Below are positions 3,563-48,532 of a stretch of 64,000 nt of DNA, one piece after another. A model generated the notes under the pieces. The model searched no databases. It saw only the letters and a program-made list of their open reading frames with translations, and was not told where the DNA came from. Each line of letters begins with the position of its first letter. Within the stretch, counting starts at the first letter, position 1. Origin of the DNA: Raja brachyura. Lineage: Eukaryota. The position numbers were made by a program, and so were the translations under genes. The stretch is taken from positions 2,666,001-2,730,000 of the forward strand of contig OY740826.1 in assembly GCA_963514005.1 (NCBI GenBank), written 5' to 3'.

Positions 3563-4162
3563 CTGGAAAAACAAACATTGATACACTTTGGTGCATAATC
3601 TGAAATAATCAGATATTAATTCCAAAACTAATTTTAAAATATCAATTGTTTATTCAATACAGGACAATTCCAGGATAAAGTGTCAAGAACTTAAAATAAA
3701 GGCTAAATTCTTCAGGACAGAAATGAGATATTTCTTCACTCAGAATATAGCGAGTTATTTTCTAGGGTTGAAATAAATCAGTTGTTAATTGCATTCCAGC
3801 AAGATCAAAATATTATTGATTCCATGAAGTAATAAACTGAATCTCGGTAAGAGAGGAAACTGCATTTAGGGTACAGGTCAGGCGTGATCTGCCTGAAAGG
3901 TCCAGACCCAAAATGTTGCCTGTAAAGATTCAAGATTGCAGCTTCCAGCCAACAAACATTTTACTTCGGAGTCACGTGAGTGACTACGTGAAGACCCCGC
4001 CAGCACGCATGCGCGACATATCGTTGAATGCACTGCGAAGCGACAGGCAGGAGGAGCGTCGCTCCTCCAGCGCAAGTTTAAAAGTGGTCCGCATGTAAGT
4101 ATTTACCATTCCTGAGGTAGTTGTCGGCTCTGTTAAGTATTTTTCTTACAGAGCGCACCACC

Positions 4163-5150
4163 ATGCAATCAAGGACGAAGTCCAAACGAGCCGCTGACAA
4201 ACTAGCTGCCGAGGACCATGAAGCAGGCAGCGGTCGAGTTCTCCAGGGCTGGTGATACAAACCGCAGCCCCCGACTTCACGCCGCTACAGCCCGCAGGTG
4301 CTCCTCAGACAGGCGGCAAAACCACCCGGAAATCGGGCAGGTCCGCTGACTCGGCTGAGTCCGGACTGGAGGACACCCCGCCGGCGGAAGCGACAGCGGT
4401 CGATTATCCCGCATGGAGCGGATGGTGGAGCAGTTGCTCCAACGTGACCTACTACAGCAGGGGTATGGTCACAGTGGGTCTCCTCGCAGACCCATGGCTT
4501 CACCCTTTACAGGGCTGCCAAATGTCTCACCCTCCTCGCAGGGGAGCATAAGGTGTCAGAACTGGGCTGACTCTGAAGAGGGGAGTGTGGCTGAAGAAAC
4601 ACCAATGCTAGGGGTGCCAGAAGAGGAGCTACTGGGCATGGTATCAAAATTTGCGATGCCTACCCAAAAACGGGTGCCGTTGCAGCCGAAGTTGGCAGCC
4701 AGTATAAACTACATGGCAACGAATCAACTTCAGGAACAGGCCATTAATGACACCGCAGCCAAATACCTAGCTCCTGAGAATTGTGTCTCCCTCAACTTGC
4801 CTGCAGTCAACAACCCCATCTGGGGTGACATGAGCCCTGCCATCAGAAGCCAGGAAGTAAAACTCCAAACAATCCTAAAACTACTAGCTTCTGGGATTAC
4901 GGTCGTTGCCAGGTCAGTGGATGGAGTGGAGATGCCGGAATAGCTACAGGATGCTCTGGCACTCCTCTGTAACACTCAGTTTGAGATCAATTGTTACAGA
5001 AAGAGTGTCATCCGGCCTGCACTGAACCCCAAGTTCGCGGGGTTGTGCAGACCCAGCAATGCACAGCCGCCTACACTACTATTTGGGGACAACCTGCCTA
5101 AGCAGATAAAAGACCTCGATGAAGAGGCAAAGGCAATAGGCATGATATAA
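4163..5150 (+). pseudogene. DIRS gag-like ORF1 (disrupted)
   Basis: ORF pieces such as KYLAPENCVSLNLPAVNNPIW lie upstream of the RT; stops and frameshifts are present. Confidence 0.7.
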
Positions 5151-5408
5151 GTGCCGGCTGCCATCCCCATACCTGCGGTGACAGCACCCCTATGCATCCA
5201 CCAGCAGTCCACGCTACCACAGCGACAGAACACCTGCTGGTGAAAGCTCGAAGGCCATCCAACCTGCCCAACGGTCTTTTTTAGACCATGCCCCAGCACG
5301 GCCTTCCTGGAAGATGCGCCACCCCCACACCACAGCGCCTCCACCTCCCAGGAAACAAGGACAGAGGAAACCAACACAGCACCACCGGTAGGTGGGTCTG
5401 GTTGCCTC

Positions 5409-6900
5409 ATGAACATTGCATGTTTAACCTCTTCACGGATTGGGGGACGATTGCACTTGTTTCGGGATGCATGGAGTTCTATAACTTCTGATCCTTTCAT
5501 ACTGCAAAGTATTCAGGGATACAACATTGAATTTGTTCACAAACTTCACCTTCCTGTTCAGCATACACCTAGTCAAAAGTTTGTGCTTTCACAGAAAGAA
5601 AAGACAGAAGGTCATGCTGAACTCTTAAGACTACATACGAAAGGGGTAATTGAGAAAACCAAAAATGTTTGTATCGAACATCTTCACAAAAAAAAACACG
5701 GCGGATGCCGCATCATTATTGATTTGACACAACTGAATACTTTCGTGCAGTACGCCCACTTCAAAATGGAACCTTTTGTTACTGCCAAACAACTAGTTTC
5801 CAAGAGATACTTCATGGCTTGCATCGACCTAAAGATGCATGCTATTCAGTACCAATAGACAAAGATCATTGCAGATATTTGAAATTTGCCTGGATGGGGC
5901 AGCTCTGACAGTGTAAAACGCTGCCTAATGGATTAACATCAGCACCCAGACTGTTTACAACATTATTGAAACCAGCTTTACCATGTCTCAGAAAACAAAA
6001 ACATATTGTTATGGCATACCTCGATGACATTTTAATTGTGGGGAAACCCTTGGAGTTGACCAAATTGACTGTCTCAGCCACTGAGCACTTATTTCAAAAA
6101 CTGGGGTTTATCATCCATCCAGACAAATCCAAATTTATGCCTTCTACCACTATGGACTACTTGGGATTCACGATTGACTATGTTCATATGTCTGTCACTT
6201 TGCCACTGAAAAAAGCGTCAGACTTGATAGAAGCATGTAACAGCCTTGCTGGCATCAGTAAACCGTCTATTCGGCAAGTAGCCAGGGTAATTGGGAAGCT
6301 TGTGGCTGCCTTTCCAGCCACACAATTTGGGCCCTTGCATTACTAAAACCTACAAAGAGCAACATTTGCAGCACTCAAAGAGCAAAATTGCACCATGCTG
6401 GCCATTTTGACAGGCCAATGCAATTACCAGCAAAAGCAAAATTGAAATTACAATGGTGGATAAACAATGCTCGACATTGCTCTAATCCCATTACAATCAC
6501 GAACCCCTCGGTTATACTACAAACTGACGCCAGCGCTCAAGGTTGGGGAGCAACTAATACCACCTCCAGTTGCGGTGGTAGATGGAATGCACATGAATTA
6601 ACCTTACTCCCGGCACTGGGAATTAATCATCTAGAAATGCTGGGAGCATTTCATAGATTCCGGGCTTACTGTTCGGACATGCACCATCTGCATGTACGCC
6701 TACAAATGGATAGTACCACCGTGGTGGCTTACATCAATCATATGGGTGGAATTAAGTCAATATCTTGTGATGAATTGGTCAATACTATCTGGCACTGGTG
6801 CTAAGAAAGGAACATTTGGATATCAGCCATTTACCTTCCGGGTAAGCTAAATACAGTGGCGGATATCAGGTCACGCAAGTTTAATGACAACACCGAATGG
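5409..6900 (+). pseudogene. DIRS reverse transcriptase/RNase H (disrupted)
   Basis: IGGRLHLFRDAW, RIIIDL, HFKME, YLDD and LQTDASAQGWGA motifs are spread over several frames. Confidence 0.92.
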
Positions 6901-7311
6901 ATGTTGGACCACAAAGTGTTTGACAATATTGTAGATCGGTATGGAACACCAGATATCGACTTTTTGCATCCAGACTCAATCATCAAATACCAACATATGT
7001 TGCATGGGAACCAGACCCTGGGGCAGTAGCGATGGACGCTTTCTCGCTGCACTGGGGGGGATTTGTTTTTCTATGCATTTCCCCCCTTCTGTCTCATCAG
7101 TCGGGTCTTGCAGAAAATTCAACAAGACTCCACATCGGGTATTCTGGTTGTACCAAACTGGCCTACTCAGCCATGGTTCCCTGTGGTACTGGACATGGTC
7201 TCAGAACCATGCATTCCAATACCCAAACGTCCGAGTTTACTGGTACATCCTGTGATGGGGGAGAGTCACCCATGCCATGACCGGATTAACATATTGGTTT
7301 GCAGGGTTTGA
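6900..7311 (+). pseudogene. DIRS Dam-like methyltransferase domain (disrupted)
   Basis: YAFPPFCLISRVLQKI...VVPNWPTQPWF is typical of the DIRS MT domain. Confidence 0.85.
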
Positions 7312-8280
7312 AAAGGCCACTCCTGGATTTCGGATTCTCGGACCAAACAATAAATATCATCACAGCATTGTGCAGGGAGTCGACCAGTAGACAATACGTC
7401 ACTTACGTCAAGAAATGGGAGGTGTTTTGTACCAAGACAAACACCACATATAACACAGCCACCATTACAGAAATGCTGGAGTTCCTGGCAAGCCTTCATT
7501 TTGATCAAGGTTTCAGCTACAGTGCCATCAACTGTGCCAGGAGTGCCCTATCCTCATATCTCGGACTAGGTTTATATCATCTTGCAGTTGGGTCTCACCC
7601 CTTGGTGTCTAAACTTATGAGGGGTATTTTTAACTCAAATCTCCACAGGCCTAGATATTCCCAGACCTGGGATATTGGCATTGTGCTAACCATGCTCCGA
7701 GGGTAGGCACCAGTAACGTCTCTTTCCCTAGCCAAATTGACATACAAAATGGTAATGCTGATGGCACTTGTGACGGCGCAACGGGTCCAGTCCCTACACA
7801 AGCTAAGTATGGACGCCATGGTTATAACCAACAATAAGGTAACTTTCTTCATTCAGGGGTTACTCAAACAAAACAGGCCTGGATCATCTGGCCGCAAGTT
7901 GGATTTCCTGGCCTATCCCGTAGACAGCAGCCTATGCATAGTGACCCACCTTTTACACTACATGGAGGTCACCAAGTGTCTCAGGGGCACGGAAAGGGCT
8001 CTGCTTATGTCACAAACGTCCTCATCACAGAGTCACCGTGTAAACTATTTCAAGATGGCTAAGGGTGGTTTTGGGTGCAGAGGGGGTGGACACTGATGTT
8101 TTTAAATCTCACTCCACCAGGGCTACATCTACATTGGCGGCAAGGATGATGGAAGTTCCTATGGACCACATCCTTGCAACGGCGGGTTGGGCTAATGAGA
8201 AAACCTTTCAGTGGTTCTATAATAAACCCATGGACGCACCTGAGATGTTTGCAGACACAATATTAAGTTCTGTATTATAA
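7299..8280 (+). pseudogene. DIRS tyrosine recombinase (disrupted)
   Basis: SYSAINCARSALS, LVTAQRVQSL, FKSHSTR, AGW and FY motifs, split by a stop and a frameshift. Confidence 0.9.
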
Positions 8281-9329
8281 TTTCCCCTAAGTAGGGTATT
8301 ATTATTGTCATTTGTTAAATAAATACCCTTCTTGGTTTTCAGCACAGTTTCATGTCTGAAATACATTAACATACTTCCTCCATTTGTCATTATGGTAGTG
8401 TGTGAGCATTGTCTTCCTTCCAGGGCATGAAATCACAGCTTTGAAATCTTCACATAGTCACTCACGTGACTCCGAAGTAAAATAGTAAGATTAAATGAGA
8501 ACTTCCAGTTTGAAGTTTGATCTTTATTTTATGAGGCGTTACGATGAGGGATTACGTGCCCTCCGCTCCCAAACCCTCTATTATAAAGATCAACTGGTAT
8601 GCTGGTTCTCTTATCTTACTATCTTAGTCAACTCTGTTATCTGTGATTTCACACCGCTGCTTTGAACAATGTCGCGCATGCATGCTGGCGGGGTCTTCAC
8701 GTCATCCCTCATCGTAACTCTTCATAAAATAAAGATCAAACTTCAAACGGGTAAGTTCTCATTTAATCTTACTATCAGTGTCTACATTTCTGGCAATGAA
8801 TACAGTGACTATCATGGGCTTCCACTGCATTGAAGTCAGGAGCAGCACCCAGGGGCTGCTGCTAAACCGCTATTGTGAAAAAGAATAAGTTGTCACAGAT
8901 AAAATCGGAGATAATCAGCAAGCCAGGCAGCAACAACTGAGTGAATGTTTCATTCTTTCCTCACAGATGGGGAAAGTTGCCAGATAGAGACAGACATCTA
9001 CAGGGATGAGGGAGGTCATCTGACTGGCCTCCCAGTTCAATATTAATGTCAGTGATCCACTCCAGAGCACAGGGAACTCATCCACTCCTCACTGACACCA
9101 TTTCCTGGGGTTGTGATGGTCTGAGATGGAGCAGCAGCATTTCCCCCGTTCCCAGGCCCACGGGAGGACATTTATCCGGCATCTTCTGCCCACTCTCCAT
9201 GTCAAAGCTCCCTGGAGTCCTAGCTCCAAGCCCTGCATCCCAGACATGATATTGTCTCTTTCAGCAGCACTTCGGTCTCCCTTCCTGAGCTCAGACACCC
9301 ACTTCTCCTCACATCACCTACTCTCACTC

Positions 9330-9530
9330 CTCCTCACTTACACACCCACACCTCGACTAAACCCCTCGCCTCAACCAATTCTCATGACTAAACCTCGCCT
9401 TCATTAAACTTCACCTCACACCTAAACCTCAACTCACTAAACTTCACCTCGACTAAACTTCACCTCAACTAAACCTCACACCTTGACTAAGTCCTTGACT
9501 TGACAAAACTTTACCTCACCTCAACTAAAC
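9330..9530. repeat. Degenerate CTAAACCTCAC-type tandem repeat, left part
   Basis: Repeated ctaaac/ctcacct units; continues at 13090-13510 beyond the RTE insertion. Confidence 0.75.
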
Positions 9531-9694
9531 GCCAAAGAAATCCATCCTTGTGGGGACATGGAACATCCGAACCGTGTTCCAGGCTGCCACAATTGCCAAC
9601 AAATTGGTGCACAACAATCTCACTCCTGAGCTTGGCTGAAACAAGATGGACACAGTCAGGGGAGACCAAATTGGTCAGCGAGCAGTCCCTTATC

Positions 9695-10212
9695 TAGGAA
9701 TGTAACAAAATGTTGAGATTTTAAAAAGCCGGTAATTTATCCCATCAGATAAAGCATAAAAGGAACTTTAATTTGACACATAATTCACTTTCATATCTTC
9801 AGTATTAAAAAAGCTATGGCCATTATCATCCTCGGAAATTAGCATCTTGTTCCCTATTGCTTTTCCATTGACTTAACACAAAAGCTGTGACCAAGGACAG
9901 TAAAAAGCCAATCTTTCATAAAAATTAAGAGAACTGAATGATATTTTTCAGTTATTATAGATTGAAGCATTCTGAAACAAATATAAAACATCTTACTTGG
10001 ATGACCTGAAATTAAGCATATAATTAGCTAGTTACCTAATTACAAAATTGACAGATTTTTCTTCATCGACTAGCAGCCCGAGGAAATCCCTCTCTAAAAG
10101 CAGTATAAACCTACATTTTAATCCCGCCCCCCCCTCCCCCCAAGGCTCAAAGTTGCGCACAGCCAGTGGCAGATCTGCAGCGCCGCTGAAGGTAGTTTTT
10201 GTAAAATCGCTA
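9695..10212. mobile_element. Non-autonomous TIR DNA transposon, TAG...CTA family, copy A
   Basis: Ends TAGGAATGTAACAAAA / TTTTGTAAAATCGCTA; TSD degraded. Confidence 0.8.
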
Positions 10213-10772
10213 CTTTAATCTACTCTGGACAGGAAGAGCACTTAAGCATCGAAGGAGAAAATGTAGCAATGTTACAACATTTGAGATCTTAAAAATCAAG
10301 TCTGCAATTTATCCCATCAGATAAAGCATAGAAAGAAGTTTAATTTCATTCCTAATTCACTTTCATATCTTCGGTATTAAAAAGGTTATGGCCATTTTCA
10401 AACTCGGAAATTAGCATCTTGTTCCCCATTGCTTTTCCATTGACTTAACACAAAAGCTGTGATCGAGGACAGTCAAAAACCCATAACTTTCTTAAAAATC
10501 AAGAGAACTGAATGACATTTTCAGTTAATATAGATGGAAGCATTCTGAAACAAATATGAAACATCTTACATAGATGACCTGAAATGGAAGCATATAATTA
10601 GTTAATTACCTAATTGTAGTTAATTACAAAATTGACCGTTGTGACTGAAATAGTAATAAACACCCAGACTACCTTGAAAATTCAAAAATGTGATATTCTG
10701 AAGATCAGACCTTTAATATTATTGTATTATATGCTGTAAGTCCGTAACAGATAGGTAAATAAATTACAATTT

Positions 10773-11008
10773 CTAGCAATAGACCAAGTCTTTATGGAGA
10801 AGATCAGTTGCTGCCTGGTACATTGGCAAATCATTATCAGTAGCATCATCATACTCCTCAGATTGTAAACAATAAGCAACTCTGTACACCTTGTTTTTCC
10901 TCAACTTTTCAATTTTGGCTACATTGTAAACTACAAGTTTTTGCTCTTCAAACCACGCATGACATGCCTTTCTGCCCACTACTTTCCCATTAAGAATGTC
11001 CAGTAGAT
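10773..11008 (-). pseudogene. C-terminal coding remnant of the transposon protein, resembling a Spin/Ssty (spindlin) Tudor-like domain
   Basis: VVGRKACHAW...VYRVAY...MYQAATDLLHKDL parallels spindlin MIGKAVEHMF...WFYITY...MYQLLDDYKEGDL. Eye alignment only. Confidence 0.5.
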
Positions 11009-11741
11009 TCCATTTCTTAAGAAAAGGATATTTTCTTTAAATAGCCTAATAACAAACTGATCTGATTCACACAAGAATTCACAATATAACATGATTTTTA
11101 AATCTCACTGTCATTAATTTATATGGCAGATGGAAGGAATTTAATGTTTAATTCCCACAAATAATCTAGAAACATCCACTCAATATAATTAAATTATTAT
11201 TTTTTTTACAATACATGGGACTAAAACTGATCTTTAGTATAAACATATTGACTATGAGTAGAAAATAACACAAAATATACACGATTTAGATGCTCTTATG
11301 ACATAATTGTCCAAAAAAAAGCATTTAAATCATCTTGCGAGTGGGTTTTTCTGGAACGCGATCGATTGGAACGTTGCATTTGCGGTGAATTTGAACTCCA
11401 TATCGGCAGGAAAAACACGGCCGGTTCGTATGGGGCCTAAATCACATTTTCGCATCGTAACATTTGATTAAAGCCATCCCAAGAAGCAAGATTATATGTA
11501 AAATACACGACTTACATTTTGTTTTGTCCCTTTCATGTGATCCGTCACGTTGTAGGCGTTGAGGATGTTAGAAGTCGCTTGTTAATTTTAATGTAATTAT
11601 CAAATTGTCTCGCGATTAAATTAAAAAAAAATCTGGAACAGAAGTCGGATGGATAATTTTGAGCAGCTCGCAGCCCGAGGAAGTCCACCTCCGACAGGCT
11701 GGAGAAGACGGCATTTTAATCCCGCCCCCCCCCCCTCAAAG

Positions 11742-12777
11742 TAGGTATGTTGCAAAACTTACCTTTAGCGGCGCTGCAGTTCTGCCGCTCCCCTTGTGCG
11801 TGACTTTGGCGCCTTTCAGAGGGGGGCGGGCTTAAAGTGCCGTTATTTTCAACAGACCTGGATAATCGATGAATGTCGGGTGATTTCGTTGCGGAAGAAA
11901 AATCGCTCCGACATTTCATCAATAAAGGTATTTTTAAATTACTCTAAATTTTTTATTAACTAGAGTAATTTAAAAATCACCTTCAAAAGCTGTGAGCACT
12001 GACAAACGGAAGGATTTTCCGTAGGGCAGAAAAAAAGGTAAATAGTTTATTTTTATATTAAAAGTTGGTTTTTCGGGAGGCTTTAATATTATTTTTATGT
12101 TGCGAAATGGGGTCCCAAAAAATGTATGAACAAACAGTATTTTTCCTCCCGACTTCACTGCTAACCGCAACGTTCCAATCCACCGCATTCCACTAAAACC
12201 CACTCGCTAGTTGATTTAAATGGCCATTTATTTACAGGCAAAAAACACTAAATTCCTTCCATTTGGCCCAGAAATTCATGAAAATGAGATTTAAAAATTA
12301 TGTTATATTGTGGGTTATTGTGTGAATGTTATTTGGACACTTAGGCAATTAAAAAAAAGTTTATCTTTTCTTAAGAAATGGATAAATGTTTAGATCCACT
12401 CATTGAATTTTGTAATTAGGTACAATTAGATAACTAACTAATTATATGCTTTAATTTCAGGTCATCCAAGTAAGATTGTTTCATATTTGTTTCAGAATGC
12501 TTCAATCTATAACAACTGAAAATTTCATTGAGTTCTCTTAATTTTTAAGAAAGTTATGGGCTTTTAACTTTTCCAGATCACAGCTTTTGCGTTAAGTCAA
12601 TTGAAAGGCAATGGGGAGCAAGATGCTAATTTCCGAGTATGAAAATGGCCATAACTTTCTTAATACTGAAGATATGAAAGTAAATTAGGTGTCAAATTAA
12701 ACTTCTTTTTATGCTTTATCTGATGGGATAAATTGCAGACTTGATTTTTTAAATCTCAAAATTTTGTAACATTGCTA
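11742..12777. mobile_element. TAG...CTA DNA transposon, copy C (1036 bp, inverted, nested in B)
   Basis: Perfect 7-bp TSD CTCAAAG at 11735-11741 and 12778-12784. Confidence 0.92.
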
Positions 12778-13089
12778 CTCAAAGGTGTCAAAGTCGTGCA
12801 CACAGCCAGTGGCAGAACTGCAGTGCAGCTGAAGGTAAGTTTTGTAACATCACTAGAAAATAGAGTAGGATTGGACACACCCTCAGGAAACCTGCCACAA
12901 ACATCACCCGGCAAGCCCTGAAATAGAACCCCCAAGGAAAAAGGAAAAGAGGTCGCCCCAGGAACAGACAAATGTCTGAGAATCAGCTCAACTGGGGAGA
13001 TCTCGAAAGAACTACCAACAGCCGAGTGAGGTGGAGGACATTTGTCAATGGCCTATGCTACCTAGAGGAGCAAAGGGCTTAAGAAGAAG

Positions 13090-13510
13090 AACTAAACCCC
13101 TCAACCACCTCGACCAAACATCACCTCAGCTAAACCTGACATCAGCTAAATTTCACACCTCACTAAATCTTGCTTCGATTAAACCCCTAGCTTCAACTAA
13201 ACCTCACATCAACTAAACCTCACACCTCACACCAAACTACTCCTCACACCTAAACCTCGCTTCAATTAAACTCCTCACCTCAGCTAAACCTCACTGAAAC
13301 TTTACCTCACTAAACATCGCCCCCAACTAAACACACCTCACTACTATATTTCACCTCACACCGAGACCAACTAAACCCTCACCTCAACTAAACTTGCCCT
13401 CACTAAACCTCCCACCTCACAACTACACTTCACCTCAACTCCACTTCACCTGAACTAAACCTCAACCTCAGCTAAATTTCACAACTGACCTCAGCTAAAC
13501 CTCTCACCTC
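13090..13510. repeat. Degenerate CTAAACCTCAC-type tandem repeat, right part
   Basis: Same units, abutting the promoter exon donor. Confidence 0.8.
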
Positions 13511-13900
13511 GCGCTCAATCGCCCGCGCGCCCCTCACCTGACGATATATTTATAGCCCAACGGCGCCTCACGTGAGCGGAGCGGCTCCAACCAGAGCGCG
13601 GGTCACTTGGGCAGCTCGAGCCCTCGGCGGGAAAAGGCGCCAAAAGTCGTCGCGTGTCTCCCGCCATCCTCGCTTTCCCGCCATCCTCGCGGGTGGAGTG
13701 CGTAGCCCTCCATGGAGTTGCTTTTACAGTGCAGCAGCTGCTGCTGTTGCAGTGTGGTGAAGCTTCTCCAGTTTAGCAACTCCTGCAGTGGAGCATCTCC
13801 TGCAGCAGCAGGGAAAGTTCAAGCCTCCACCATCTCCTCGGGCAGCGTGCCCCGGATTGCAACCACCCTCTGGGTGAGTTTAATCTCATACACGTTCGTT
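13500..13900. promoter_or_regulatory. CpG island, probable bidirectional promoter with non-coding first exons
   Basis: CpG-dense unique sequence. Minus-strand donor CAG|GTGAGG (exon end 13538) and plus-strand donor TGG|GTGAGT (13874). E-box TCACGTGA at 13568-13575; E2F-type GGCGGGAAA (13626), GGCGCCAAA (13636) and TTTCCCGCC (13674). Confidence 0.65.
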
Positions 13901-14015
13901 TTATTGTTCTGTTATTGAGTATAGTCTGGTCTGCAGTTCCTTGTACCATCATTTTATTTTAATTCTTGACTCCAAATGCTACGTTTCCTCATCTGTTCTT
14001 GCCCCATCAGTGATG

Positions 14016-16107
14016 TAGCAATGTTACAAAATGTTGAGATTTTAAAAATCAAGTCTGCAATTTATCCCATCCGATAAAGCATACAAAGAAGTTTAATTTG
14101 ACACCTAATGCACTTTCAAATCTTCAGTGTTAAAACATTTATGGCCATTTTCATACTCCGAAATTAACATCTTGTTCCCCATTGCCTTTCCATTGACTTA
14201 ACACAATAAGGTTCTGATCGACGACAGTCAAAAGCCCATAACTTTCTTAAAAATTAAGAGAACTGAAATACATTTTCGGTTATTATAGATTGAAGCATTC
14301 TGAAACTAATATGAAACAATCTTACTTGGATGACCTGAAATTAAAGCATATAATTAGTTAGTTACCCAATTGTAGCTAATTACAAAATTCAATTACTAGC
14401 AATGTTACAACATTTTGAGATTTTAAAAATCAAGTCTGCAATTTATCCCTTCAGATAAAGCATAAAAGGAAGTTTAATTTGACACCTAATTTACTTTCAT
14501 AGCTTCAGTATTAAGAAAGTTATGGCCATTTTCATACTCGGAAATGAGCATCTTGCTTCCCATTGCCTTTCAATTGACTTAACTCAAAAGCTGTGATCTG
14601 GAAAAGTTAAAAATCCATAACATTCTTAAAAATTAAGAGAACTCAATGAAATTTTCAGTTATTATAGATTGAAGCATTCTGAAACAAATATTAAACAATC
14701 TTACTTGGATTACCTGAAATTAAAGCATATAATTAGTTAGTTATCTAATTGTAGCTAATTACAAAATTCAATGAGTAGATCTAAACATCTATCAATTTCT
14801 TAAGAAAAGATAAACTTTTTTTAAATTGCCTAAGTGTCCAAATAACATTCACACAATAATCCACAATATAACATGATTTTTAAATCTAATTTTCATGAAT
14901 TTCTGGGCCAAATGGAAGGAATTTAGTGTTTGATTCCTGTAAATTAATGGCCATTTAAATCAACTTGCGAGTGGGTTTTAGTGGAATGCGGTGGATTAGA
15001 ACATTGCGGTTAGCGGTGAAGTCGGGGGGAAAAATACTGGGGGTTCATACATTTTTTGGGGACCCCATTTCGCAACATTAAAATATTATTAATGCCTCCC
15101 GAAAAACCAACTTTTGATATAAAAATAAACTATTTACCTTTTTTTCTCCCCTACGGAAAATGCTTCCGGTTGTCTGCGCTCACGGCTTTTGAAGGTGATT
15201 TTTAAATTACTCTAGTTAATAAATAATCTAGAGTAATTTAAAAATACCACCATTCATGAAATGTCGGAGCGATTTTTCTTCAGCAACCAAATCGCCCGAC
15301 ATTCATCGATTTGTCCTGCCTGTTGAAAAACGGCACTTTAAGCCCGCCCCCCTCTGCAAGGCGCGAATGTCGCGCACACGGGGAGCGGCAGAAGTGCAGC
15401 GCCGCTAAAGATAAGTTTTGTAACATACCTACAATTACTAGATCTAAACATCTATCCATTTCTTAAGAAAATATTAACATTTTTGTTAAAGCCTAAGTGT
15501 CCAAATACCATTCACACATGAATTGACAATATAACATGATTTTAAAATCTAATTGTCATTAATTTATAAGCCAAATTGAAGGAATTTTGTGTTTAATGCC
15601 TGTAAATTAATGGGCTTTTTAAACAGCTTGCGAGTGGGATTTTCTGGAATGCAATGGATTGGAATGTTGTGGTTGCGGTGAATTTAAACCCTATATAGGC
15701 ATGTTCATATGAGGACTAAATCACTGTTTCGCAACATGAAATATTGATTAAAGTCCCCTAAACAAGCAAATGTATATGTAAAAATAAACAGCTTTCACTT
15801 ACCTGTCCCCTACGTAAAATCGGTCCCCGTTGTCGGCTTTCACGGCATTAACAGATAATTTTTATTTTACTGCAGCGCAGAAATAGTCGGGCGATTAAAA
15901 AAAAAAAAATAAATAATCATAATAATAACTTACCGGCGGTCGGAACGCATCTCCAGAAATAGATCGTACTCCGACAAAATATTATTCCGGATGGCAAGGG
16001 GAAAGCCGTATTTTAACCCCGCCCCCATCCTTAAAGGCGCCAAAGACGCGCACACGGCCAGCGGCAGAACTGCAGCACCGCTAAAGGTAAGTTTTGTAAC
16101 ATACCTA
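14016..16107. mobile_element. TAG...CTA DNA transposon, copy D (hosts copy E)
   Basis: TIRs TAGCAATGTTACAAAA / TTTTGTAACATACCTA; 7-bp TSD AGTGATG / ATTGATG. Confidence 0.88.
14397..15431. mobile_element. TAG...CTA DNA transposon, copy E (1035 bp, nested in D, same subfamily as C)
   Basis: Perfect 7-bp TSD CAATTAC at 14390-14396 and 15432-15438. Confidence 0.92.
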
Positions 16108-18067
16108 ATTGATGTCCCCTTTGTTCCAGCAATCCACCCCAACCCCTCTCTACAACTTGTTTTTGTTCTTTTCTATTCTGGTGAAGGGTCTCTGATCCAA
16201 AACGGAACTGTTTCTTTCTCCAGAACTGCTGTCTAAACTGCTGAATTATTTTAAATGTCTTCTATTTTTATTTCAGATTTTTAGCATCTGCGATTCTTTA
16301 CTTTACACTTTCAGTTTTTTGTTGTGACCTGCCAACAACGGATCAAAGGAAATCTGATACGTGATGTTGTAATCTACTGGGATTCAAGTAATTAGTAAGT
16401 GTTTCAATGGGAAGGTTCTACCTAGCCGGGATGGGGCTCCATTTTAGTTTTGTTTAGAGATTAGAGATACAGCGCAGAAACAGGCCCTTCGTCCCACCGA
16501 GCCCACGCTGATCACTGATCCCCGCTCGCTAACACCATCCTACACACACTCAGGACAATTTACACTTATACCAAACCGATTATTCCTCAAATCTTTACGT
16601 CTTTGGACTGTGGGTGGAAACTGAAGACCTTGACGAAAATCCACGCAGGTGATAAGTGATTGGAGCAGAATTAGGCCATTCGGCCCATCAAGTCTACTCC
16701 GCCATTCAATCATGACTGATTGCTCCCTCCCAACCCCATTCTCCTGCTTTCTCCCCATAACCCCAAAATGTCTATTGGCTTGGCCTGCATAGCCTTCTGT
16801 GGCAAATAATTCCACAGAATCACCACCCTCCGAGCTGAAACATCACCATTACTTCTCTCCATTAATGTCTATCTTCGGGAAGAATACTGATTTATCTAAC
16901 TTCATGTAACCCTTTCATCCCCTCTCTCCCTCTCTTCCCTACCTATGTCATTGTACTACTTTCAAAGTCGTCTTGTTGTGTCTCATTGTCTGTAACTCGT
17001 TTTCACCAAGCTCTCAGCTAACAATGACCTATTTCCTTTATCATTGTTACATTTGTTTACATTTCTTTCATTCATTTGTTCCATATCTCACTATACATTC
17101 AATTTCCCTCCTGGGATAAATAAAGTTCTATCGTATCTCGTATCATACAACCATCTATATCTCTCGTTGCCCCTTCCCTGACTCGACCCGAAACATCACC
17201 TGTTCCTTTTCTCCAGAGATGCTGTGTGACCCTCTGAGTTACTCCAGCTTTTTGTGTCTATCTTCGGTTTAAACCAGCATCTGCAGTTCCTTCCTACATA
17301 TAACATGTGTTAATTAGGTATACGGTGAGATTGTGTTGAAACTGTGATGTTTAAAACTTGCAGACTGTGGAAGTCAGAGCACCAGTTGTGACTGTGAGGC
17401 GTGGTGTTGTGTTGGAAGCACACAGATGGCCTGGGACAGAACACTTGCATTAGATGCATCAAGAAGTTGCTATGGAGAAGGTGCAGGACATTCCCCCCCG
17501 GTTACAGCAGGGTTCCCTTCCTGGGAACCGTTCCCAAGCGGAACATGCGGCCGTGAATAGAGTTCCCATACGGCAGAAGATGCCTGTCGCCCTGCAGCCG
17601 CCGGTAAATCCATCCCACATCTCCCAGACACTGGCTCATGTGTACGGGCTGTAATTTAATGTGTCTGTAAGCTGGGGACGAGCCACACCTCAAACAAGTC
17701 AAATCGGGGCTGGACAACGGTTCATTTTTCACGGTCATGTAGAAACAGACCCTTCGGCCCAACCTGTCCATGCTGATCAAGATGCCTCCTCTAAGCTGAT
17801 CCTATTTGCCCACGTTTCACCCATAGCCCTCTGACCTTTCTTACCCATGTACAAATGTCTTCGGAAAAATGTATTTTCAGATCAATGACCTTCATCAGAA
17901 CTGGATGCAGTCACATGATGTGGCCAGTTCTGATACAAACTGGAAAGGCTGGTTATCTGAAATTGCCCGTATTAATGACGACCTCAAGGATTGCACCACA
18001 CGCTGAAGTGGTGCTGTTCCGCAAGATTTTGTCGGCTTCGTTGGAACAATGAGAATGGTTTAATCTG

Positions 18068-22490: not shown

Positions 22491-23921
22491 TAGGCATGTG
22501 CCGTGAGTAATAGATCAGGGTAGGATGTCAGTCGGCTTTTTAAAAAAAACTTAAACCGCCCATGCGCAGATTGTTCTCTCCGTAAAAATATTAAATTAAA
22601 TAAAGACAGTAACAATTCAATTTGCCCCAGGCTGCCAAGTCTCCTTTATTCTGAATTACTGAATGGGTGGGGGGTGAAGAGTGATGGCAGGTGGAGAGAT
22701 GGTGGGAAAAAACGGGAGCACAGGGTAAAGTTGAATCAGTTGTCATCTTATTGAATGACAACACTTGGTCAAAGGACCAATTGGGGGACAGTTCCTTTCA
22801 CAGCGTGTGGAGAGTCTGTGCCAGGGATAAAGTTGCGGGGAGGGCAGGAGTGTTGAGAAGGAGGGGGTCTGGGATAATGCCAGTAACTCACTCACCGCTG
22901 CTGCAGCGCTCCGGACGTGGAGCCACCGCATTGTAGCTGGGGATAGAATCACCTCAGGTGGCTGCGAGCGGCTGCCAGGACCCGACAGCAAAACCGGCCG
23001 CCACTTCAGCGCCTTCTGTCGGCTCGCTCATCTCTGGCAGTGCTTTCCGTCTGAACACCTCTCACCTGCCGCTCGCCGACTTCGCTCATGTCAGTCGCTT
23101 CCCGCAAATCCTTAAAGTCCCACAGCCGAGTAAACTCAAGCGTGCTATCGGTATTTAAGGTTTAGCGGGAAGCGACTGACATGAGTGAGGCCAGCGAGCG
23201 GCAGGAGAGAGGTTTTTAGATGGAGAGCTGCCAGAGATGAGCGGGGGCACGCAGAAGGCGCTGAAGTGGTGGCCGGTTCCGCTGTCCGGCCCGGCGGACA
23301 CTCACAGCCACCCGAGCTACTTCTCCCCCCCCCCCCCCCCCCCGCCTCAATGTGGTGGCATTGCACGCCTCCATGCAAGGAGTGTTGCAAGAGGCATGAT
23401 CCCGACCCCCTCCTTCACAAGACTCCTGACCTCCCCGCAACTTTACCCCGGGGCAGACTCCATAAACGCTGTGAAAGGAACTCTTTCGCCCCCCAACCCC
23501 GGGAAATACGGTATTTAAAAACATATAGCACTAAGAAATGTACTTACCACATTATTGGTGCACAAACTCCATTCTTCTCTCTTTGTTTCCTAAGATACTC
23601 TTTAGATAATGGTAATCCATATTTGAAAAACCCGCCAAGATACTAGCGCTGCGCATGCACAGGCAGAATTTCTGCTGCCTTCAGCTCCCCTTGAAATTGA
23701 CGGTTTGAAGCAGTGCTGACGGCGCATGGGCTGCACAAATCTTCGTGTCTTACAAGTGCTGAGGGTGAAAGGCACGGAGAATTATGCCTACCTAAGAGAT
23801 CGATCTCTTAGACAGGCATAATTCTCCCATGCCTTTACTATTTATATTTAGTAATTATCATTTTATAATTTTAGTCAGGGTCGGCAGTGCCTACCTTGCC
23901 TACCCTAATGGCACGTGCCTG
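22491..23921. mobile_element. Non-autonomous hAT-type element, copy 1, with a long internal palindrome
   Basis: Termini related to CAGGCACGTGCC; reverse-complement homologue of 34427-35941; no matching TSD. Confidence 0.85.
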
Positions 23922-25456: not shown

Positions 25457-26764
25457 GGTTCTACGGATTTGTGCGACAGTAAGGCCACAGCCAGCACTGC
25501 CTCCCAGAACTTCCTGTCCTCTTTCACGGAGGTCTTGGAGGACTGAGTCTGAACCAACAACTAACCCTAACTGGTTCCATCCGTTCCGTTGACTCTGGTA
25601 AAACTCCCAGAAGCGATGGTTTACCGGCCGAGTTGTACTCGGCTCTGTGGGACTGGGTGGGCCTGGACCTGCTGGAAGTGTACAATGACATGCTTCTAAC
25701 CGGCAGCATGTCAGACTCTATGAGGAAGGGCAACATCACCCTAATCTACAGCAGAAAGGGGATATGAATGATTTAAGGAATTGGAGACCCATCACATTAT
25801 TGAATGTTGATTACAAGATCCTGGATAAGGCCATCGCCAACTGGGTCAAGTCTGCCCTGGGACGGGTGATCCACCCAAACGAAACCTGTGCTGTACCTGG
25901 CAGAAACATCGCAGACAGCCTGAGAGATACCATTGCCTACATGCAGGATAGACAGGTAGATGCCTGCCTAGTCAGCTTGGACCAGGAGAAGGCCTTCGAC
26001 AGGCCATTGCACACGTACATGAAACAACGTGCTCTCCAAAATGGGCGTTGGGGAGAGAATCAGGAATTGGATCCAACTGCTCTACACCGATATCTGTAGT
26101 GCAGTCCAAATCAATGGGTGGGAATCAGACAGGTTCCCCGTCAGGTCTGGAGTCAGGCAGGGTTGCCCTCTCTCCCGTCTTGTTCGTCTGTTGTATTAAA
26201 CCTTTTTTCGAGTCCATCAGGAAGGATGCGAGCATAAGAGGAGTGACATTGCCAGGCAGTGGGGGCACTCGGGTCAAAACCTCCCAGTACATGTATGATG
26301 TCGCCGTCTTCTGCTTGGATCCAGGGTTGGCCCGCAGATTGATTAGCATCTGCGACCAGTTTGCGTCGGCCATGGGAGCCAGGGTGAACCGCAGGAAGAG
26401 CGTGGCCTTACTCTTTGCAAACTGGCCTGACCGTTCTTCCGTCCCCTTCACCATCAAGCCTGAAGCTGCTGGGGATCTGGTTCGAGGGGGCTGAGGCGTG
26501 TGACAAGATTTTGCTGGAGCGGATAGCCAAGGTTGGGAAGAAACTGGAGCTGTGGAAGAAACGCTCCCTCTCTATAACGGGAAAGAACTTGGTCATCAGG
26601 TGTGAGGTGCTCTCGGGAGCTGCTGAACTGGCGCAAGTGTGGCCTGTTCCTCCCTCCTACGCCACAAGGATCACCCGGGCCGTCTTCCAGTTCATCCGGG
26701 GGTCGATGATGGACCGGGTGCGACGGGCCACAATACACAATTTGGTAGAAAAAGGGGGTAAAAG

Positions 26765-39117: not shown

Positions 39118-39611
39118 TTGTCAGATTTCCAGTGTCTGCGTTTCATTATTATTATTACTCACCAATGCCACACAGAGAGCTGCTTGCTATGAAACTTGTT
39201 ATAGAACATGGCGCTACAAGAGCAAGAGGGCGTTTCAGAGTTTCAGAATAGCATTAGCAAAAATCCCACAGGATTTTCAAAAAATAAAAGTCTTTATTTA
39301 ATAACTACGAGTCTATTTTGTAACTGCAGGTAAAGACTGTGTTTAACAGACTATCATGTGATCAGTGTCAACAGAAGCAATTATTGTCAATGTTAATGGT
39401 TACCCGCGGAACAGTCTGTGTTCTAAAGAAACAAAGGCTTTTTTAAAGAGATACAGCGGGGAAACAGGCCCTTCGGCCCACCGAGTCCGCACCGGCCATC
39501 GATCATCCGTTCACACACTAGTTCTATGTTATCCCACTATTTCATCTACAGAGGGTTAATTAATCTATGAAACCCAAGGTAGTTAAGGCTGGTGTAGCGC
39601 TCTCTCCACAC

Positions 39612-39735
39612 TGCCCCGCCCTTCCTCCACACCGCCCCTCCCTCCCTCGTCACCGCCCCTCCCTCCCTCCACACCGCCCCTCCCTCCTTCCTCACCGCCC
39701 CTCCCTCCCTCCACAACGCCCCTCCCTCCCTCCTC
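39612..39735. repeat. ~21-bp C-rich minisatellite overlapping the Siglec stop codon
   Basis: Repeats of CACCGCCCCTCCCTCCCTCC. Confidence 0.8.
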
Positions 39736-39892
39736 CCACCAACCCCATCCCCTGCTTGGACTGGAACCAGAGCTCCGCGTATTCCACCCCCTCGCCACTG
39801 TGCACGGTGTCTCCGCTGCTCGGTACCTCCCGCAGGTTGGTGTACACGGCCGCTTGATCTTCCCCTGGCCCGTCCTGTCCACTCCCCGCGCT
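39692..39892 (-). CDS. Siglec-like receptor, terminal cytoplasmic exon with ITIM motifs
   Basis: Acceptor cttccAG|AGC, phase 0. SAGSGQDGPGEDQAAVYTNLREVPSSGDTVHSGEGVEYAELWFQ...GR*. VEYAEL is a canonical ITIM. Confidence 0.85.
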   Translation of the reverse strand, partial: SAGSGQDGPGEDQAAVYTNLREVPSSGDTVHSGEGVEYAELWFQSKQGMGLVGGGREGRCGGREGR

Positions 39893-48336: not shown

Positions 48337-48532
48337 ACTTCCGGTGGCGCCATGTTCTAGGAGAGAACAGTGCCAGACCAGCTCTTAAAAAATCTGGAAA
48401 AAAAACGGGGTTAGAGGAGGCTGCTAACACTACTTACCGTAGGAGATCGATTTTAAACGGCTCCGGGTGCGATTGTAAGCTGCGTGACGTCATCAGGCGC
48501 GCGACTTTAGCGACTCCGGTAAGAAATTTAAA

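What the first reader, a model, noticed from the sequence alone, without database searches (positions are those of the whole stretch)
9695..16107. DNA transposon family with 7-bp TSDs and a spindlin/Tudor-like domain, piled up around a CpG-island promoter
Seen: five copies with TAG...CTA ends and ~16-bp TIRs. Four have 7-bp TSDs (CTCAAAG, CAATTAC, GAAAATG/A, AG/TTGATG). All lie within ~4 kb of the promoter at 13500-13900, and I saw none elsewhere in the 64 kb. Copy B keeps a C-terminal coding remnant resembling a Spin/Ssty repeat. Known: 7-bp TSDs are rare (hATw-type hAT, some P elements), and spindlin Tudor-like domains read H3K4me3, the mark on CpG-island promoters and the mark PRDM9 writes. 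Inference: the transposase may carry a histone reader that targets H3K4me3 chromatin in the germline.
Basis: partly seen in the sequence, partly recalled or inferred. Interest (0 to 1): 0.8.

Follow-up and report, generated by a model that had tools for sequence, protein, structure and literature searches.

The report
hAT-like transposon with Tudor reader domain
Five broken copies of a very abundant cut-and-paste transposon sit next to a CpG-rich gene start in a skate-like genome, and the enzyme that moves this family carries a small spindlin-like domain that may read histone marks to choose landing sites.

Summary
Window 9695-16107 contains five non-autonomous copies of one DNA transposon family. 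Three are primary insertions and two are nested in other copies. The ends are TAG...CTA with 16-bp inverted repeats. Target duplications are 7 bp: perfect for two copies, 6/7 for two, decayed for one. No other copy lies in the 64 kb.

Copy B keeps a 79-codon C-terminal remnant. Its relatives are the C-terminal ends of ~860-930-aa proteins found across animals, none with a Pfam match. A predicted structure of one shows a Hermes (hAT)-like DDE core (Z 14.8-18.8).

The remnant folds with pLDDT 92.6 into a Tudor-like barrel. Its best structural matches are Spindlin1-4, in the domain that binds H3K4me3 (Z 7.2-8.9). Aromatic and acidic pocket positions are conserved, so the Spin/Ssty guess is supported.

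Promoter or H3K4me3 targeting is not shown. Only one of about eight CpG-rich segments in the window carries copies, and no RNA run was available. The family is extremely high-copy, so local hopping or nesting explains the cluster as well.

This is a new variant of a known kind: a hAT-fold transposase with a built-in reader-like domain. I could not check its Repbase/Dfam name.

The parts
9695..10212 (+). Copy A: internally deleted non-autonomous copy (518 bp), oldest-looking, with a decayed target duplication
   Evidence: Ends read. It is 86-88% identical to the left ~350 bp of the other copies. Flanks are CCTTATC / (C)TTTAATC. The frame test needs 8 bases removed.
10264..12855 (+). Copy B: non-autonomous copy interrupted by C. 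It is the only copy that keeps part of the transposase reading frame. TSD GAAAATG (10257-10263) / GAAAATA (12856-12862).
   Evidence: Removing B plus 7 bp restores the host LINE reading frame.
11742..12777 (-). Copy C: 1036-bp copy nested in the right arm of B, in reverse orientation. Perfect TSD CTCAAAG (11735-11741 / 12778-12784).
   Evidence: In one search, 27 contigs of run X4 run into unlike sequence at 12778.
14016..16107 (+). Copy D: sits in the putative first intron, 142 bp after the possible splice donor. Interrupted by E. TSD AGTGATG (14009-14015) / ATTGATG (16108-16114).
   Evidence: In one search, 50 contigs of X4 run into unlike sequence at 16107.
14397..15431 (+). Copy E: 1035-bp copy nested in D. 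Perfect TSD CAATTAC (14390-14396 / 15432-15438). It is 93.3% identical to C.
   Evidence: In one search, contigs that continue ...ATCTAAACATC after 14399 are D-type copies without this insertion.
10773..11036 (-). Remnant of the transposase C-terminus inside B. The frame is open for 87 codons plus the stop (10773-10775). The 79 codons at 10776-11012 form the Tudor-like domain. The rest of the gene is deleted.
   Evidence: The window copy departs from the family consensus at G32A, W48C, Y60N, M62L, L67A and has an extra V31. The majority of contigs carry the consensus letters at 10869, 10835, 10829 and 10813-4.
16015..16107 (-). Right end of D; the same module is in all copies. Read in the transposase's direction it gives the TIR, then a GC box (GGGGCGGGG) and a TTAAAAT(A) motif about 80-100 bp inside. 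This is the likely transposase promoter / 5' UTR (inference).
   Evidence: Read. It is conserved among copies at 75-85% identity (16030-16102 vs 12778-12850, 84.9%).
13480..13900 (+). CpG-rich segment with a possible first exon (ATG at 13712, GTGAGT at 13874). Promoter status is not shown.
   Evidence: GC 0.61, CpG o/e 0.88. ORF 13712-13918. No RNA run. Summed contig depth is about ten times single-copy depth, so paralogues exist.
9540..13080 (+). Degenerate LINE fragment in three pieces (9540-9694, 10213-10263, 12856-13080) set in a ~20-bp-unit satellite (9300-9530, 13080-13500). It is the target of insertions A and B.
   Evidence: frame ...TRWTQSGETKLVSEQSLIYSGQEEHLSIEGENGVGLDTPSG....

Best explanation
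The stretch is a nest of five dead, non-autonomous copies of one very high-copy cut-and-paste DNA transposon family in a skate-like genome.

The family is moved in trans by a ~900-aa DDE transposase. Its catalytic core has the Hermes (hAT) architecture: an RNase-H fold with a large all-helical insertion domain. The candidate catalytic residues are an invariant D...D...CxxH...E set. The enzyme recognises 16-bp TAG...CTA inverted repeats and joins the ends 7 bp apart on the target, which gives 7-bp duplications.

The transposase ends in a single spindlin-type Tudor-like beta-barrel with a conserved aromatic and acidic pocket. The most likely role of this barrel (inferred, not shown) is to hold the transpososome on a methylated histone tail and so bias where the element lands.

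The local pile-up reflects repeated landing in one permissive neighbourhood: three hits within 4 kb of a CpG-rich gene start, and two hits into sister copies. It does not reflect a demonstrated preference for CpG-island promoters. Which mark the domain reads, if any, is unknown.
For: Copies, ends and TSDs.

Family termini and copy number: 46,951 contigs of run X1 were laid on the 5951 bases. Summed word depth in the transposon bins is about 4e4-1.1e6, against about 20 for single-copy contigs in the promoter segment. The tool warns that this is no copy number.

The remnant belongs to a transposase:
- HMMER against 1.84 billion representatives gave 92 hits. The match is C-terminal in P0053 (922 aa), P0090 (929), P0092 (862), P0052 (729), P0082 and P0005.
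- The domain consensus is present in the 60- and 40-sequence full-length alignments.
- tblastn finds only this piece in the window.

Core fold:
- AF2 model of P0053, pLDDT 85.5.
- Foldseek: all ten best rows are Hermes, E down to 1.2e-6.
- VIA: Hermes Z 14.8-18.8 with 336-348 residues aligned. The next best are ISCth4 and integrase cores at Z about 10.9.
- D356 lies in strand 351-360, D434 follows strand 428-433, and E716 lies in helix 713-728. In the 40-sequence alignment D434, C459, H462 and E716 are invariant and D356 is nearly so (>=90%).

Tudor-like domain:
- AF2 pLDDT 92.6.
- Spindlins rank top. They align to Spindlin1 residues 124-193, the second domain, whose cage binds trimethyl-lysine (PMC8213585, passages read).
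- The HMMER printout aligns H18, W20 and Y29 of the peptide with the H-x-(F/W)...W-x-G positions of the spindlin repeats.
- Counts in the 55-row alignment: H18 50/54, W20 51/55, Y29 55/55 aromatic, Y47 53/55, W48 48/55, Y54 48/55 aromatic, position 60 47/55 aromatic, D70 53/55.
- The domain is acidic: median net charge -3, and -7 for residues 48-79. That suits a basic histone tail rather than DNA.

Precedent: fusions of chromatin readers with transposons are known for Chromo and PHD domains (bioRxiv 10.1101/2021.11.30.470311, passages read).
Against: - No binding or integration data exist.
- Z of 7-9 for a small barrel is 'middling' by the tool's own note. In the wide search Spindlin-4 (7.2) is tied with the RDM15 Tudor domain (7.1) and the TraI domain (6.9).
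- The Pfam Spin-Ssty model does not match. The window peptile had no family at E<=10, and Spin-Ssty is not among the 25 families listed for the 55 members.
- PDB profile hits to spindlins have E 0.23-1.1, which is not significant.
- Only three pocket positions are aligned by a tool. The rest are placed by spacing, and the fourth cage residue is ambiguous (Y54 or position 60).
- I had no access to model coordinates, so cage geometry was not checked.
- The ends and TSD of an autonomous copy could not be defined in the metagenome loci. The link between this transposase family and the 7-bp TSD therefore rests on copy B alone.
- hAT sequence hallmarks (BED, PF05699) are absent, and the TSD is 7 bp, not 8.
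Confidence: 0.7

Rival explanations
1. The spindlin-like domain reads H3K4me3 and steers insertions to CpG-island promoters or PRDM9-marked sites in the germline, and that is why the five copies surround 13500-13900.
For: - The best structural match is the H3K4me3-binding second domain of Spindlin1-4.
- Pocket-type aromatic residues are conserved.
- Three primary insertions lie within 3.8 kb of a CpG-rich segment.
I did not test that.
Against: - By the 400-bp screen, about seven other CpG-rich segments exist in the window (near 4000-4600, 22700-23500, 26500-27000, 35000-35800, 39400-40000, 45400-46300, 55800-56500). None carries a copy.
- None of the five insertions is inside the CpG-rich segment itself.
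- The majority letters of the flanks of 27 and 50 other copies are AT-rich. This is weak evidence, since it is also expected for random sites in a 44% GC genome.
- Tudor-like barrels with cages read many marks. RDM15 (H3K4me1) and BAHCC1 (H4K20me1) score almost as well.
- Promoter activity is unproven, because no RNA run was available.
Confidence: 0.15
2. The cluster is only local hopping plus tolerance of insertions in a transposon-rich, dispensable region. The C-terminal barrel has another job, such as DNA or transposon-end binding, oligomerisation or host-factor docking, like the SH3-like C-terminal domain of retroviral integrases.
For: - Two of five insertions are into sister copies.
- All five lie within 6.4 kb and none lies in the other 57.6 kb.
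- The surroundings are LINE, DIRS and satellite sequence.
- The small barrel also matches the TnsB N-terminal domain (Z 6.7, 4.9) and the TraI domain (Z 6.8-7.1).
- Preference of cut-and-paste elements for nearby reinsertion is general knowledge that I recall; I read no paper on it here.
Against: - The domain is acidic (median -3; -7 in its second half) and rich in invariant aromatic residues. That is unlike a DNA-binding surface.
- In the 40 of 121 listed variant rows, the places where C or E differ from the family majority are not shared between C and E. They therefore do not look like recent copies of one another.
- The domain is conserved across the whole animal-wide family, so it is under selection for some function.
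Confidence: 0.3
3. The remnant in copy B is a captured exon of a host spindlin-like gene, not part of the element's own transposase.
For: Non-autonomous elements can capture host fragments (general knowledge). The fold matches host spindlins.
Against: - The closest relatives (up to 68% identity) are C-terminal ends of hAT-fold transposase-like proteins, not spindlins.
- The remnant sits where the 3' end of the transposase gene should be. It reads toward the left TIR, with the stop 510 bp from the end.
- Identity to spindlins is only 12-16%.
Confidence: 0.03
4. The copies arose by segmental duplication of one nested pair rather than by five separate insertions.
For: There are two nested pairs (B with C, D with E), 1.2 kb apart.
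Against: - Each copy has a different target duplication.
- C is reversed and sits in B's right arm, whereas E is direct and sits 374 bp into D.
- The flanks of B (LINE) and D (intron-like unique DNA) are unrelated.
Confidence: 0.02

Closest known systems
hAT superfamily transposons (Hermes as the solved example)
   Same: - DDE RNase-H core with a large helical insertion domain. Hermes Z is 14.8-18.8 over 336-348 residues.
- CxxH motif after the second D.
- Short TIRs beginning with TAG.
- Abundant deletion derivatives.
   Different: - The TSD is 7 bp, not 8.
- No BED finger and no Pfam hAT dimerisation domain were detected (0 of 10 proteins at E<=0.01; 0 of 40 at E<=1).
- There is a long N-terminal coiled coil.
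- There is a C-terminal Tudor-like barrel.
Spindlin / Spin-Ssty Tudor-like repeats (Spindlin1-4)
   Same: - Same small barrel: rmsd 1.6-2.7 A over 63-67 residues, aligned to Spindlin1 residues 124-193.
- Shared VGxxIxHxW...(Y/W)xG motif.
- Aromatic residues at pocket-type positions.
   Different: - One domain, not three tandem repeats.
- 12-16% identity, and no Pfam Spin-Ssty match.
- It is attached to a transposase.
- The ligand is unknown.
Transposable elements that carry chromatin readers (chromoviruses; Chromo- or PHD-bearing DNA transposons in sponges and cnidarians)
   Same: A reader-type domain is fused to the integration enzyme, which is presumed to tether it to chromatin (bioRxiv 10.1101/2021.11.30.470311, passages read).
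   Different: No tethering has been shown.
Dada superfamily
   Same: 6-7-bp TSDs, and a DDE transposase of the C/DxxH group (PMC3706591, passages read).
   Different: By that paper, Dada elements lack TIRs, insert in snRNA or tRNA genes and carry CCCC and CCHC zinc fingers. The family here has TIRs, lands in unrelated sites and has no such invariant cysteines.
P superfamily (P element, Galileo/1360-type)
   Same: 7-8-bp TSDs (a search listing for Galileo; otherwise recalled). The P element transposase is a Foldseek hit at E 1.7e-4.
   Different: It scores clearly behind Hermes and is not among the 50 best by Z. No THAP or P-element Pfam domains were found.

Membership tests
hAT superfamily | DDE RNase-H-fold core interrupted by a large all-helical insertion domain, as in Hermes | tested here: met
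   Foldseek: the ten best rows are Hermes, E 1.2e-6 to 1.3e-4. VIA Z 14.8-18.8 with 336-348 residues aligned (model 314-754 to Hermes 135-609). The next best Z is 10.9.
hAT superfamily | C/DxxH motif after the second catalytic D | tested here: met
   C459 and H462 are invariant in 60 and 40 sequences. The motif's distribution comes from PMC3706591.
hAT superfamily | 8-bp target site duplication | tested here: not met
   The TSD is 7 bp: two perfect cases (C, E) and two 6/7 cases (B, D). The frame test supports 7 bp for B. Only copy A is compatible with 8. The 8-bp rule for hATx/hATm comes from passages of PMC8721813.
hAT superfamily | BED zinc finger and hAT C-terminal dimerisation domain (PF05699) detectable by sequence | tested here: not met
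   No Pfam family in 10 long homologues at E<=0.01. None of these in 40 homologues at E<=1 among the 25 families listed. The Atlas gives only weak leads: DUF659, Dimer_Tnp_hAT and ZBED5-like at 0.77-0.78.
hAT superfamily | Short TIRs starting (C/T)A(G/A) | tested here: met
   All ten ends start with TAG and form a 16-bp TIR. The consensus rule itself is recalled, not read here.
Spin/Ssty (spindlin) Tudor-like domain | Tudor-like five-stranded barrel superposable on a spindlin repeat | tested here: met
   Model pLDDT 92.6. Spindlins fill ranks 1-24, Z 7.7-8.9, rmsd 1.6-2.7 A. Spindlin-4 ranks first of 48,161 representatives, Z 7.2, tied with RDM15 at 7.1.
Spin/Ssty (spindlin) Tudor-like domain | Significant sequence match to the family (Pfam Spin-Ssty or spindlin chains) | tested here: not met
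   No Pfam family at E<=10 for the peptide. Spin-Ssty is not among the 25 families listed for 55 members; Agenet matches 5/55 and PTM_DIR17_Tudor 3/55. Spindlin-4, -3 and -1 chains are 4 of the 5 best PDB profile hits, but at E 0.23-1.1.
Spin/Ssty (spindlin) Tudor-like domain | Aromatic cage equivalent to Phe141/Trp151/Tyr170/Tyr177 of Spindlin1 | tested here: inconclusive
   H18, W20 and Y29 are aligned by HMMER to H-x-F/W and W-x-G. Y47, Y54 or position 60, and D70 are placed by spacing only. The cage definition comes from PMC8213585. No coordinates were available to check the geometry.
Spin/Ssty (spindlin) Tudor-like domain | Three tandem repeats in one protein | tested here: not met
   There is a single barrel at the C-terminus (strands 850-915 of P0053).
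Spin/Ssty (spindlin) Tudor-like domain | Binding of H3K4me3 | not testable with these tools
   This needs peptide binding assays.
Dada superfamily | No TIRs, insertion in multicopy small RNA genes, and CCCC plus CCHC zinc fingers | tested here: not met
   TIRs are present. The targets are a LINE fragment, an intron-like site and sister copies. No such invariant cysteines exist. The features come from PMC3706591.
P superfamily | THAP DNA-binding domain and P-element transposase domains with a GTP-binding insertion | tested here: not met
   No Pfam hit. The P element transposase is a weaker structural match than Hermes and is absent from the best 50 by Z.
Non-autonomous (deletion-derivative) DNA transposon | TIRs and TSDs present, with no intact transposase gene | tested here: met
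   Only a 79-codon C-terminal piece is left, in one of the five copies.

The most novel reading that the evidence does not exclude
An animal-wide lineage of hAT-fold transposases carries a genuine methyl-lysine reader of the spindlin type. This transposase domain and the vertebrate Spin/Ssty repeat share a common origin, so one was captured from the other.
Probability: 0.15. Interest if true: 0.8.

Novelty: new variant of a known kind. Interest (0 to 1): 0.58.

Why it matters
Target choice of cut-and-paste DNA transposons is mostly explained by DNA sequence and open chromatin. Built-in histone readers are documented mainly for retroelements (chromodomains) and for a few Chromo or PHD fusions.

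This family has four features that make it useful:
- It is large and spread across animal phyla.
- No Pfam family matches it.
- Its transposase always ends in a spindlin-like Tudor barrel with a conserved pocket.
- It has intact-looking members in many animals.

That gives a directly testable case of chromatin-guided DNA transposition, by domain binding assays and integration profiling with and without the barrel. It is also a possible tool for targeted insertion.

The result further shows that Pfam-based surveys of reader-transposon fusions miss such domains.

For this genome the practical point is modest. The five copies are dead debris of a very abundant family, lying next to a CpG-rich, probably multi-copy gene start.

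Tried and rejected
- **Pfam and PDB sequence searches with the 79-aa peptide** gave nothing. A PDB sequence search with P0053 and a profile search with the 60-sequence alignment gave only coiled-coil noise, plus one weak hit of the C-terminal domain to 2qyz (E 0.42).
- **Dada** was considered because of its 6-7-bp TSD. I rejected it on TIRs, targets and zinc fingers. The 2022 Dada paper added nothing.
- **hATw** could not be checked. A one-word search was swamped by unrelated uses of the string. A narrower search found only RepeatModeler labels in an amphioxus paper, and 8-bp TSDs for hATx/hATm. No Repbase or Dfam library is on hand.
- **Literature on this combination.** Zero papers hold transposase + spindlin + Tudor + transposon. 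Two papers hold '7-bp target site' + DNA transposon + superfamily + transposase, one on Dada and one on Galileo. Five papers hold 4 of 5 terms on reader domains and transposases; one was useful. Supplementary files were not asked for, so tables of reader-transposon fusions in that preprint may list this family without my seeing it.
- **Ends of an autonomous copy.** A viral-contig scan found no relative. A metagenome scan gave 43 loci. A TIR+TSD scan over 16 of these 43 loci found one 6-bp candidate that does not look like an element end. Copy-to-copy boundaries and inverted-repeat searches gave a candidate 5' end starting with CAG in L008, L016 and L025, but no matching 3' end. The ends stay unresolved.
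- **Polymorphism and empty sites.** The contigs laid are too short to bridge the copies. No empty-site joint is among the 15 joints shown (333 were not shown).
- **Expression of the putative promoter.** No run on record as RNA holds the stretch.
- **Other windows of this genome.** Look-ups by sequence and by words found no note on this family.
- **KRAB exon.** A KRAB-like exon pattern was not found in the window.
- **Rejected rivals.** Segmental duplication and host-exon capture were rejected (see the rival explanations).

Full report
**What is in the sequence.** The window has no N. Between 9695 and 16107 I read five copies of one element and tabulated their ends:
- A: 9695-10212 (+)
- B: 10264-12855 (+)
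- C: 11742-12777 (-), inside B
- D: 14016-16107 (+)
- E: 14397-15431 (+), inside D

All ten ends begin with TAG and share a 16-bp inverted repeat. The left ends read TAGCAATGTTACAAAA and the right ends TAGGTATGTTACAAAA, with a few mismatches.

Target duplications are 7 bp:
- C: CTCAAAG twice.
- E: CAATTAC twice.
- B: GAAAATG / GAAAATA.
- D: AGTGATG / ATTGATG.
- A: only a decayed duplication.

Shifting the boundary by one base does not give an 8-bp match for C or E.

A and B sit in a degenerate LINE fragment. Taking out B plus 7 bases restores its frame (...SIEGENGVGLDTPSG...). For A, 8 bases must go.

A blastn of the region against all 64 kb finds the five copies and nothing elsewhere. The left ~370 bp are 86-90% identical among all copies. 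C and E are 93.3% identical over 1038 bp. The right halves of D and of the C/E type are only about 70% identical. The nested copies with perfect duplications are therefore the youngest, and A is the oldest.

**Abundance.** One look-up of public runs gave only coded names and no run on record as RNA. I laid the contigs of four runs (three organism labels) on 10200-16150 at 92% likeness.
- 46,951 contigs of run X1 lie on these 5951 bases.
- Summed word depth in the transposon bins is about 4e4 to 1.1e6, while single-copy contigs in the promoter segment have depth about 20.
- The tool warns that this is no copy number, but it shows a very high-copy family shared by related species.
- Contigs break into unlike sequence exactly at 12778 (27 contigs) and 16107 (50 contigs), with low agreement among the flanks. 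These are true family termini.
- Contigs that read on past 14399 with the continuation of D are D-type copies without E.
- The contigs are too short to show empty sites.

**The coding remnant.** Copy B alone keeps an extra 375 bp (10634-11008). On the minus strand the frame is open from 11036 to 10776, with a stop at 10773-10775. Pfam and PDB sequence searches with the 79-aa peptide found nothing.

HMMER against 1.84 billion representatives found 92 proteins at E<=0.001 and 20 at E<=1e-10. Three of the best hits (P0001, P0007, P0009) are repetitive proteins that match only residues 14-34, many times over. In the long hits the match is always at the very C-terminus: P0053 (922 aa), P0090 (929), P0092 (862), P0052 (729), P0082 (546) and P0005 (445). 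tblastn of seven such proteins against the window finds only this piece.

The window copy departs from the 55-row family alignment at conserved places: an extra V31, plus G32A, W48C, Y60N, M62L and L67A. At 10869, 10835, 10829 and 10813-4 nearly all contigs of the four runs carry another letter than the window. Translated, these letters give W48, Y60, M62 and L67. So the family's majority sequence in this genome matches the protein-family consensus, and the window copy is a decayed relic.

**The transposase.** A word-indexed search with residues 270-800 of P0053 found 143 relatives. All are unnamed or 'uncharacterized' and essentially without Pfam domains. Where a source gives a name, the organisms are:
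- fishes: Misgurnus, Scleropages, Oryzias
- molluscs: Patella, Littorina, Biomphalaria, Nucella
- Hydra (many entries)
- echinoderms: Asterias, Lytechinus, Anneissia
- Priapulus, Nymphon and the sponge Ephydatia

Ten long members have no Pfam family at E<=0.01. Among 40 members scanned at E<=1, the only recurring domain is a Tudor family (PTM_DIR17_Tudor, 3 of 40, best E 2.3e-4). No hAT, BED, THAP or P-element family is listed.

The 60-sequence alignment has blocks GFDATTQEG, MTDR..NHA, NCHLHPLD, RYRGNRLH and HNIDAEE.MGMFSA. D434, C459, H462 and E716 are invariant in the 40-sequence alignment, and D356 is nearly so (>=90%).

An AlphaFold2 model of P0053 built on that alignment has mean pLDDT 85.5. 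D356 lies in the first strand of the RNase-H sheet, D434 lies just after strand 428-433, and E716 lies in helix 713-728 after a roughly 250-residue helical insertion.
- In Foldseek against the PDB, the ten best rows are all Hermes transposase (E 1.2e-6 to 1.3e-4). The P element transposase follows at 1.7e-4 and ISCth4 at about 2e-2.
- Re-aligned with VIA, Hermes gives Z 14.8-18.8 with 336-348 residues aligned. Everything else is at or below 10.9, with about 125 residues aligned for integrase cores.

By fold this is a hAT-type enzyme. By sequence it lacks the hAT hallmarks, and it makes 7-bp rather than 8-bp duplications. The language-model look-alike search gave only weak leads, all hAT-related (DUF659, Dimer_Tnp_hAT and ZBED5-like at 0.77-0.78).

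Dada shares the 6-7-bp duplication. It is excluded by its lack of TIRs, its small-RNA-gene targets and its zinc fingers (PMC3706591, passages).

**The C-terminal domain.** The 79-aa peptide, folded with 54 homologues, gives a confident model (pLDDT 92.6). It has five strands, with a helix before the last strand.
- Foldseek: Spindlin-4 and Spindlin-1 chains lead the list, with probability up to 0.96 and TM 0.53-0.59. E is only 0.1-0.4, and no match reaches E<=0.001.
- VIA on Foldseek's best 1000: ranks 1-24 are all Spindlin1, 2B, 3 or 4, with Z 7.7-8.9 and rmsd 1.6-2.7 A over 63-67 residues. They align to Spindlin1 residues 124-193. Next come the RDM15 Tudor domain (7.1), a TraI domain (about 7), the TnsB N-terminus (6.7), and the SETDB1 and SMN Tudor domains (about 5).
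- The Foldseek-independent search of 48,161 representatives: Spindlin-4 is first (7.2), tied with RDM15 (7.1) and TraI (6.9). No match reaches Z 8.

By the tool's own note these Z values are middling. The fold class (Tudor/SH3-like barrel) is safe. The specific kinship to spindlins is likely but not proven.

A profile of the alignment against PDB sequences puts Spindlin-4, -3, -4 and -1 among its five best hits (E 0.23-1.1, not significant). It prints the motif VGxxIxHxW...YxG aligned with each spindlin repeat.

The trimethyl-lysine cage of Spindlin1's second domain is Phe141, Trp151, Tyr170 and Tyr177. His139, Tyr179 and Asp184 also line the pocket (PMC8213585, passages). By the printed alignment, H18, W20 and Y29 of the peptide fall on the His139, Phe141 and Trp151 type positions. 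Y47, Y54 or position 60, and D70 fit by spacing and local motif only; that is my inference.

Counts in the 55-row alignment:

| Position | Count |
|---|---|
| H18 | 50/54 |
| W20 | 51/55 |
| Y29 | 55/55 aromatic |
| Y47 | 53/55 |
| W48 | 48/55 |
| Y54 | 48/55 aromatic |
| 60 | 47/55 aromatic |
| D70 | 53/55 |

The domain is acidic: median net charge -3 overall and -7 for its second half. That argues for a basic peptide ligand rather than DNA. I could not inspect model coordinates, so cage geometry is untested.

**The neighbourhood and the targeting claim.** Positions 13500-13900 have GC 0.61 and CpG observed/expected 0.88, with a possible first exon (ATG at 13712, GTGAGT at 13874). Summed depth there is about ten times single-copy depth, so the segment has paralogues. 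Earlier notes of this scan speak of PRDM9-like gene copies in a skate-like genome; I did not test them.

The same 400-bp screen finds about seven further CpG-rich segments in the window, and none has a copy of this family. Many of these may be transposon-derived rather than promoters.

No insertion lies inside the CpG-rich segment. B ends about 650 bp upstream of 13500, and D starts 142 bp after the possible donor.

Two of the five insertions are into sister copies. That is far more than a family filling roughly 1% of a genome would give by chance (a rough estimate depths, not a measurement). It points to a local or regional effect.

In the 40 of 121 variant rows that one search lists, the private differences of C and of E from the family majority are not shared. 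So C and E do not look like recent copies of each other. This is weak evidence against simple local duplication.

The majority letters of the flanks of other copies are AT-rich. That is what random sites would also give.

Taken together, the cluster is non-random, but its cause cannot be settled from one window.

**Comparison with what is known.** Transposable elements that carry chromatin readers are known. A survey reports mostly Chromo and PHD fusions, including hAT elements with Chromo readers in a sponge and PHD readers of H3K4me in cnidarian retroelements (bioRxiv 10.1101/2021.11.30.470311, passages). I found no paper in the searchable library that combines transposase, spindlin, Tudor and transposon. 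Supplements were not opened, and Repbase/Dfam could not be consulted, so the family may well be catalogued (for instance as a hAT subgroup) without the domain having been noticed.

I file this as a new variant of a known kind: a hAT-fold, 7-bp-TSD transposon lineage whose transposase ends in a spindlin-type Tudor barrel.

**Verdict.** The fold guess is supported. The functional inference (an H3K4me3 reader that targets promoters) remains a reasonable but untested hypothesis. It has some evidence against a strong CpG-island preference, and local hopping or nesting is an equally good explanation for this particular pile-up.

Noticed in passing
window 16060-16107; also 10180-10212, 12825-12855, 15385-15431, and 11742-11790 on the minus strand: Read outward, every copy's right end carries a GC box. 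About 60 nt further on there is a consensus 5' splice site right at the terminus: AAG|GTAAGT in B, C and D, GTAGTT in A and ATAAGT in E. In D and E it points the same way as the putative host gene, so it could act as an alternative first exon. It may equally be just conserved subterminal sequence.
   Followed up: no
proteins P0001, P0007, P0009 (sequence of P0001): Three long predicted proteins consist of many tandem ~25-aa units that resemble residues 14-34 of the Tudor-like domain. They probably translate a satellite derived from a piece of this transposase gene.
   Followed up: no
window 9300-9530 and 13080-13500: A ~20-bp-unit satellite (variants of CTAAACCTCACCTCAA) flanks the LINE fragment on both sides and runs straight into the CpG-rich segment.
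   Followed up: partly
window 13583-13980: The putative promoter and first exon is not single-copy. Summed contig depth is about 240 in run X1 against about 20 for the exact-match contigs, and far more in runs of related species. This fits a multi-copy gene family or a repeat.
   Followed up: partly
loci L001-L043 (JGI metagenome contigs): A few metagenomes hold many diverged copies (66-99% identity) of full-length members of this transposase family. These presumably come from one or two eukaryotic hosts. Their 3' regions contain tandem repeats shared between otherwise 70%-identical subfamilies (for example L008 13669-14877 vs L011 5999-7189 at 85%).
   Followed up: partly
window 28000-34000 and 48500-54140: Two AT-rich L1-like LINE bodies are present, one with an intact 1281-aa ORF2 (50293-54138). 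DIRS-like ORFs lie at 4400-8100, and Ig-domain exons lie on the minus strand at 61500-62900. I saw these only in the ORF list.
   Followed up: no
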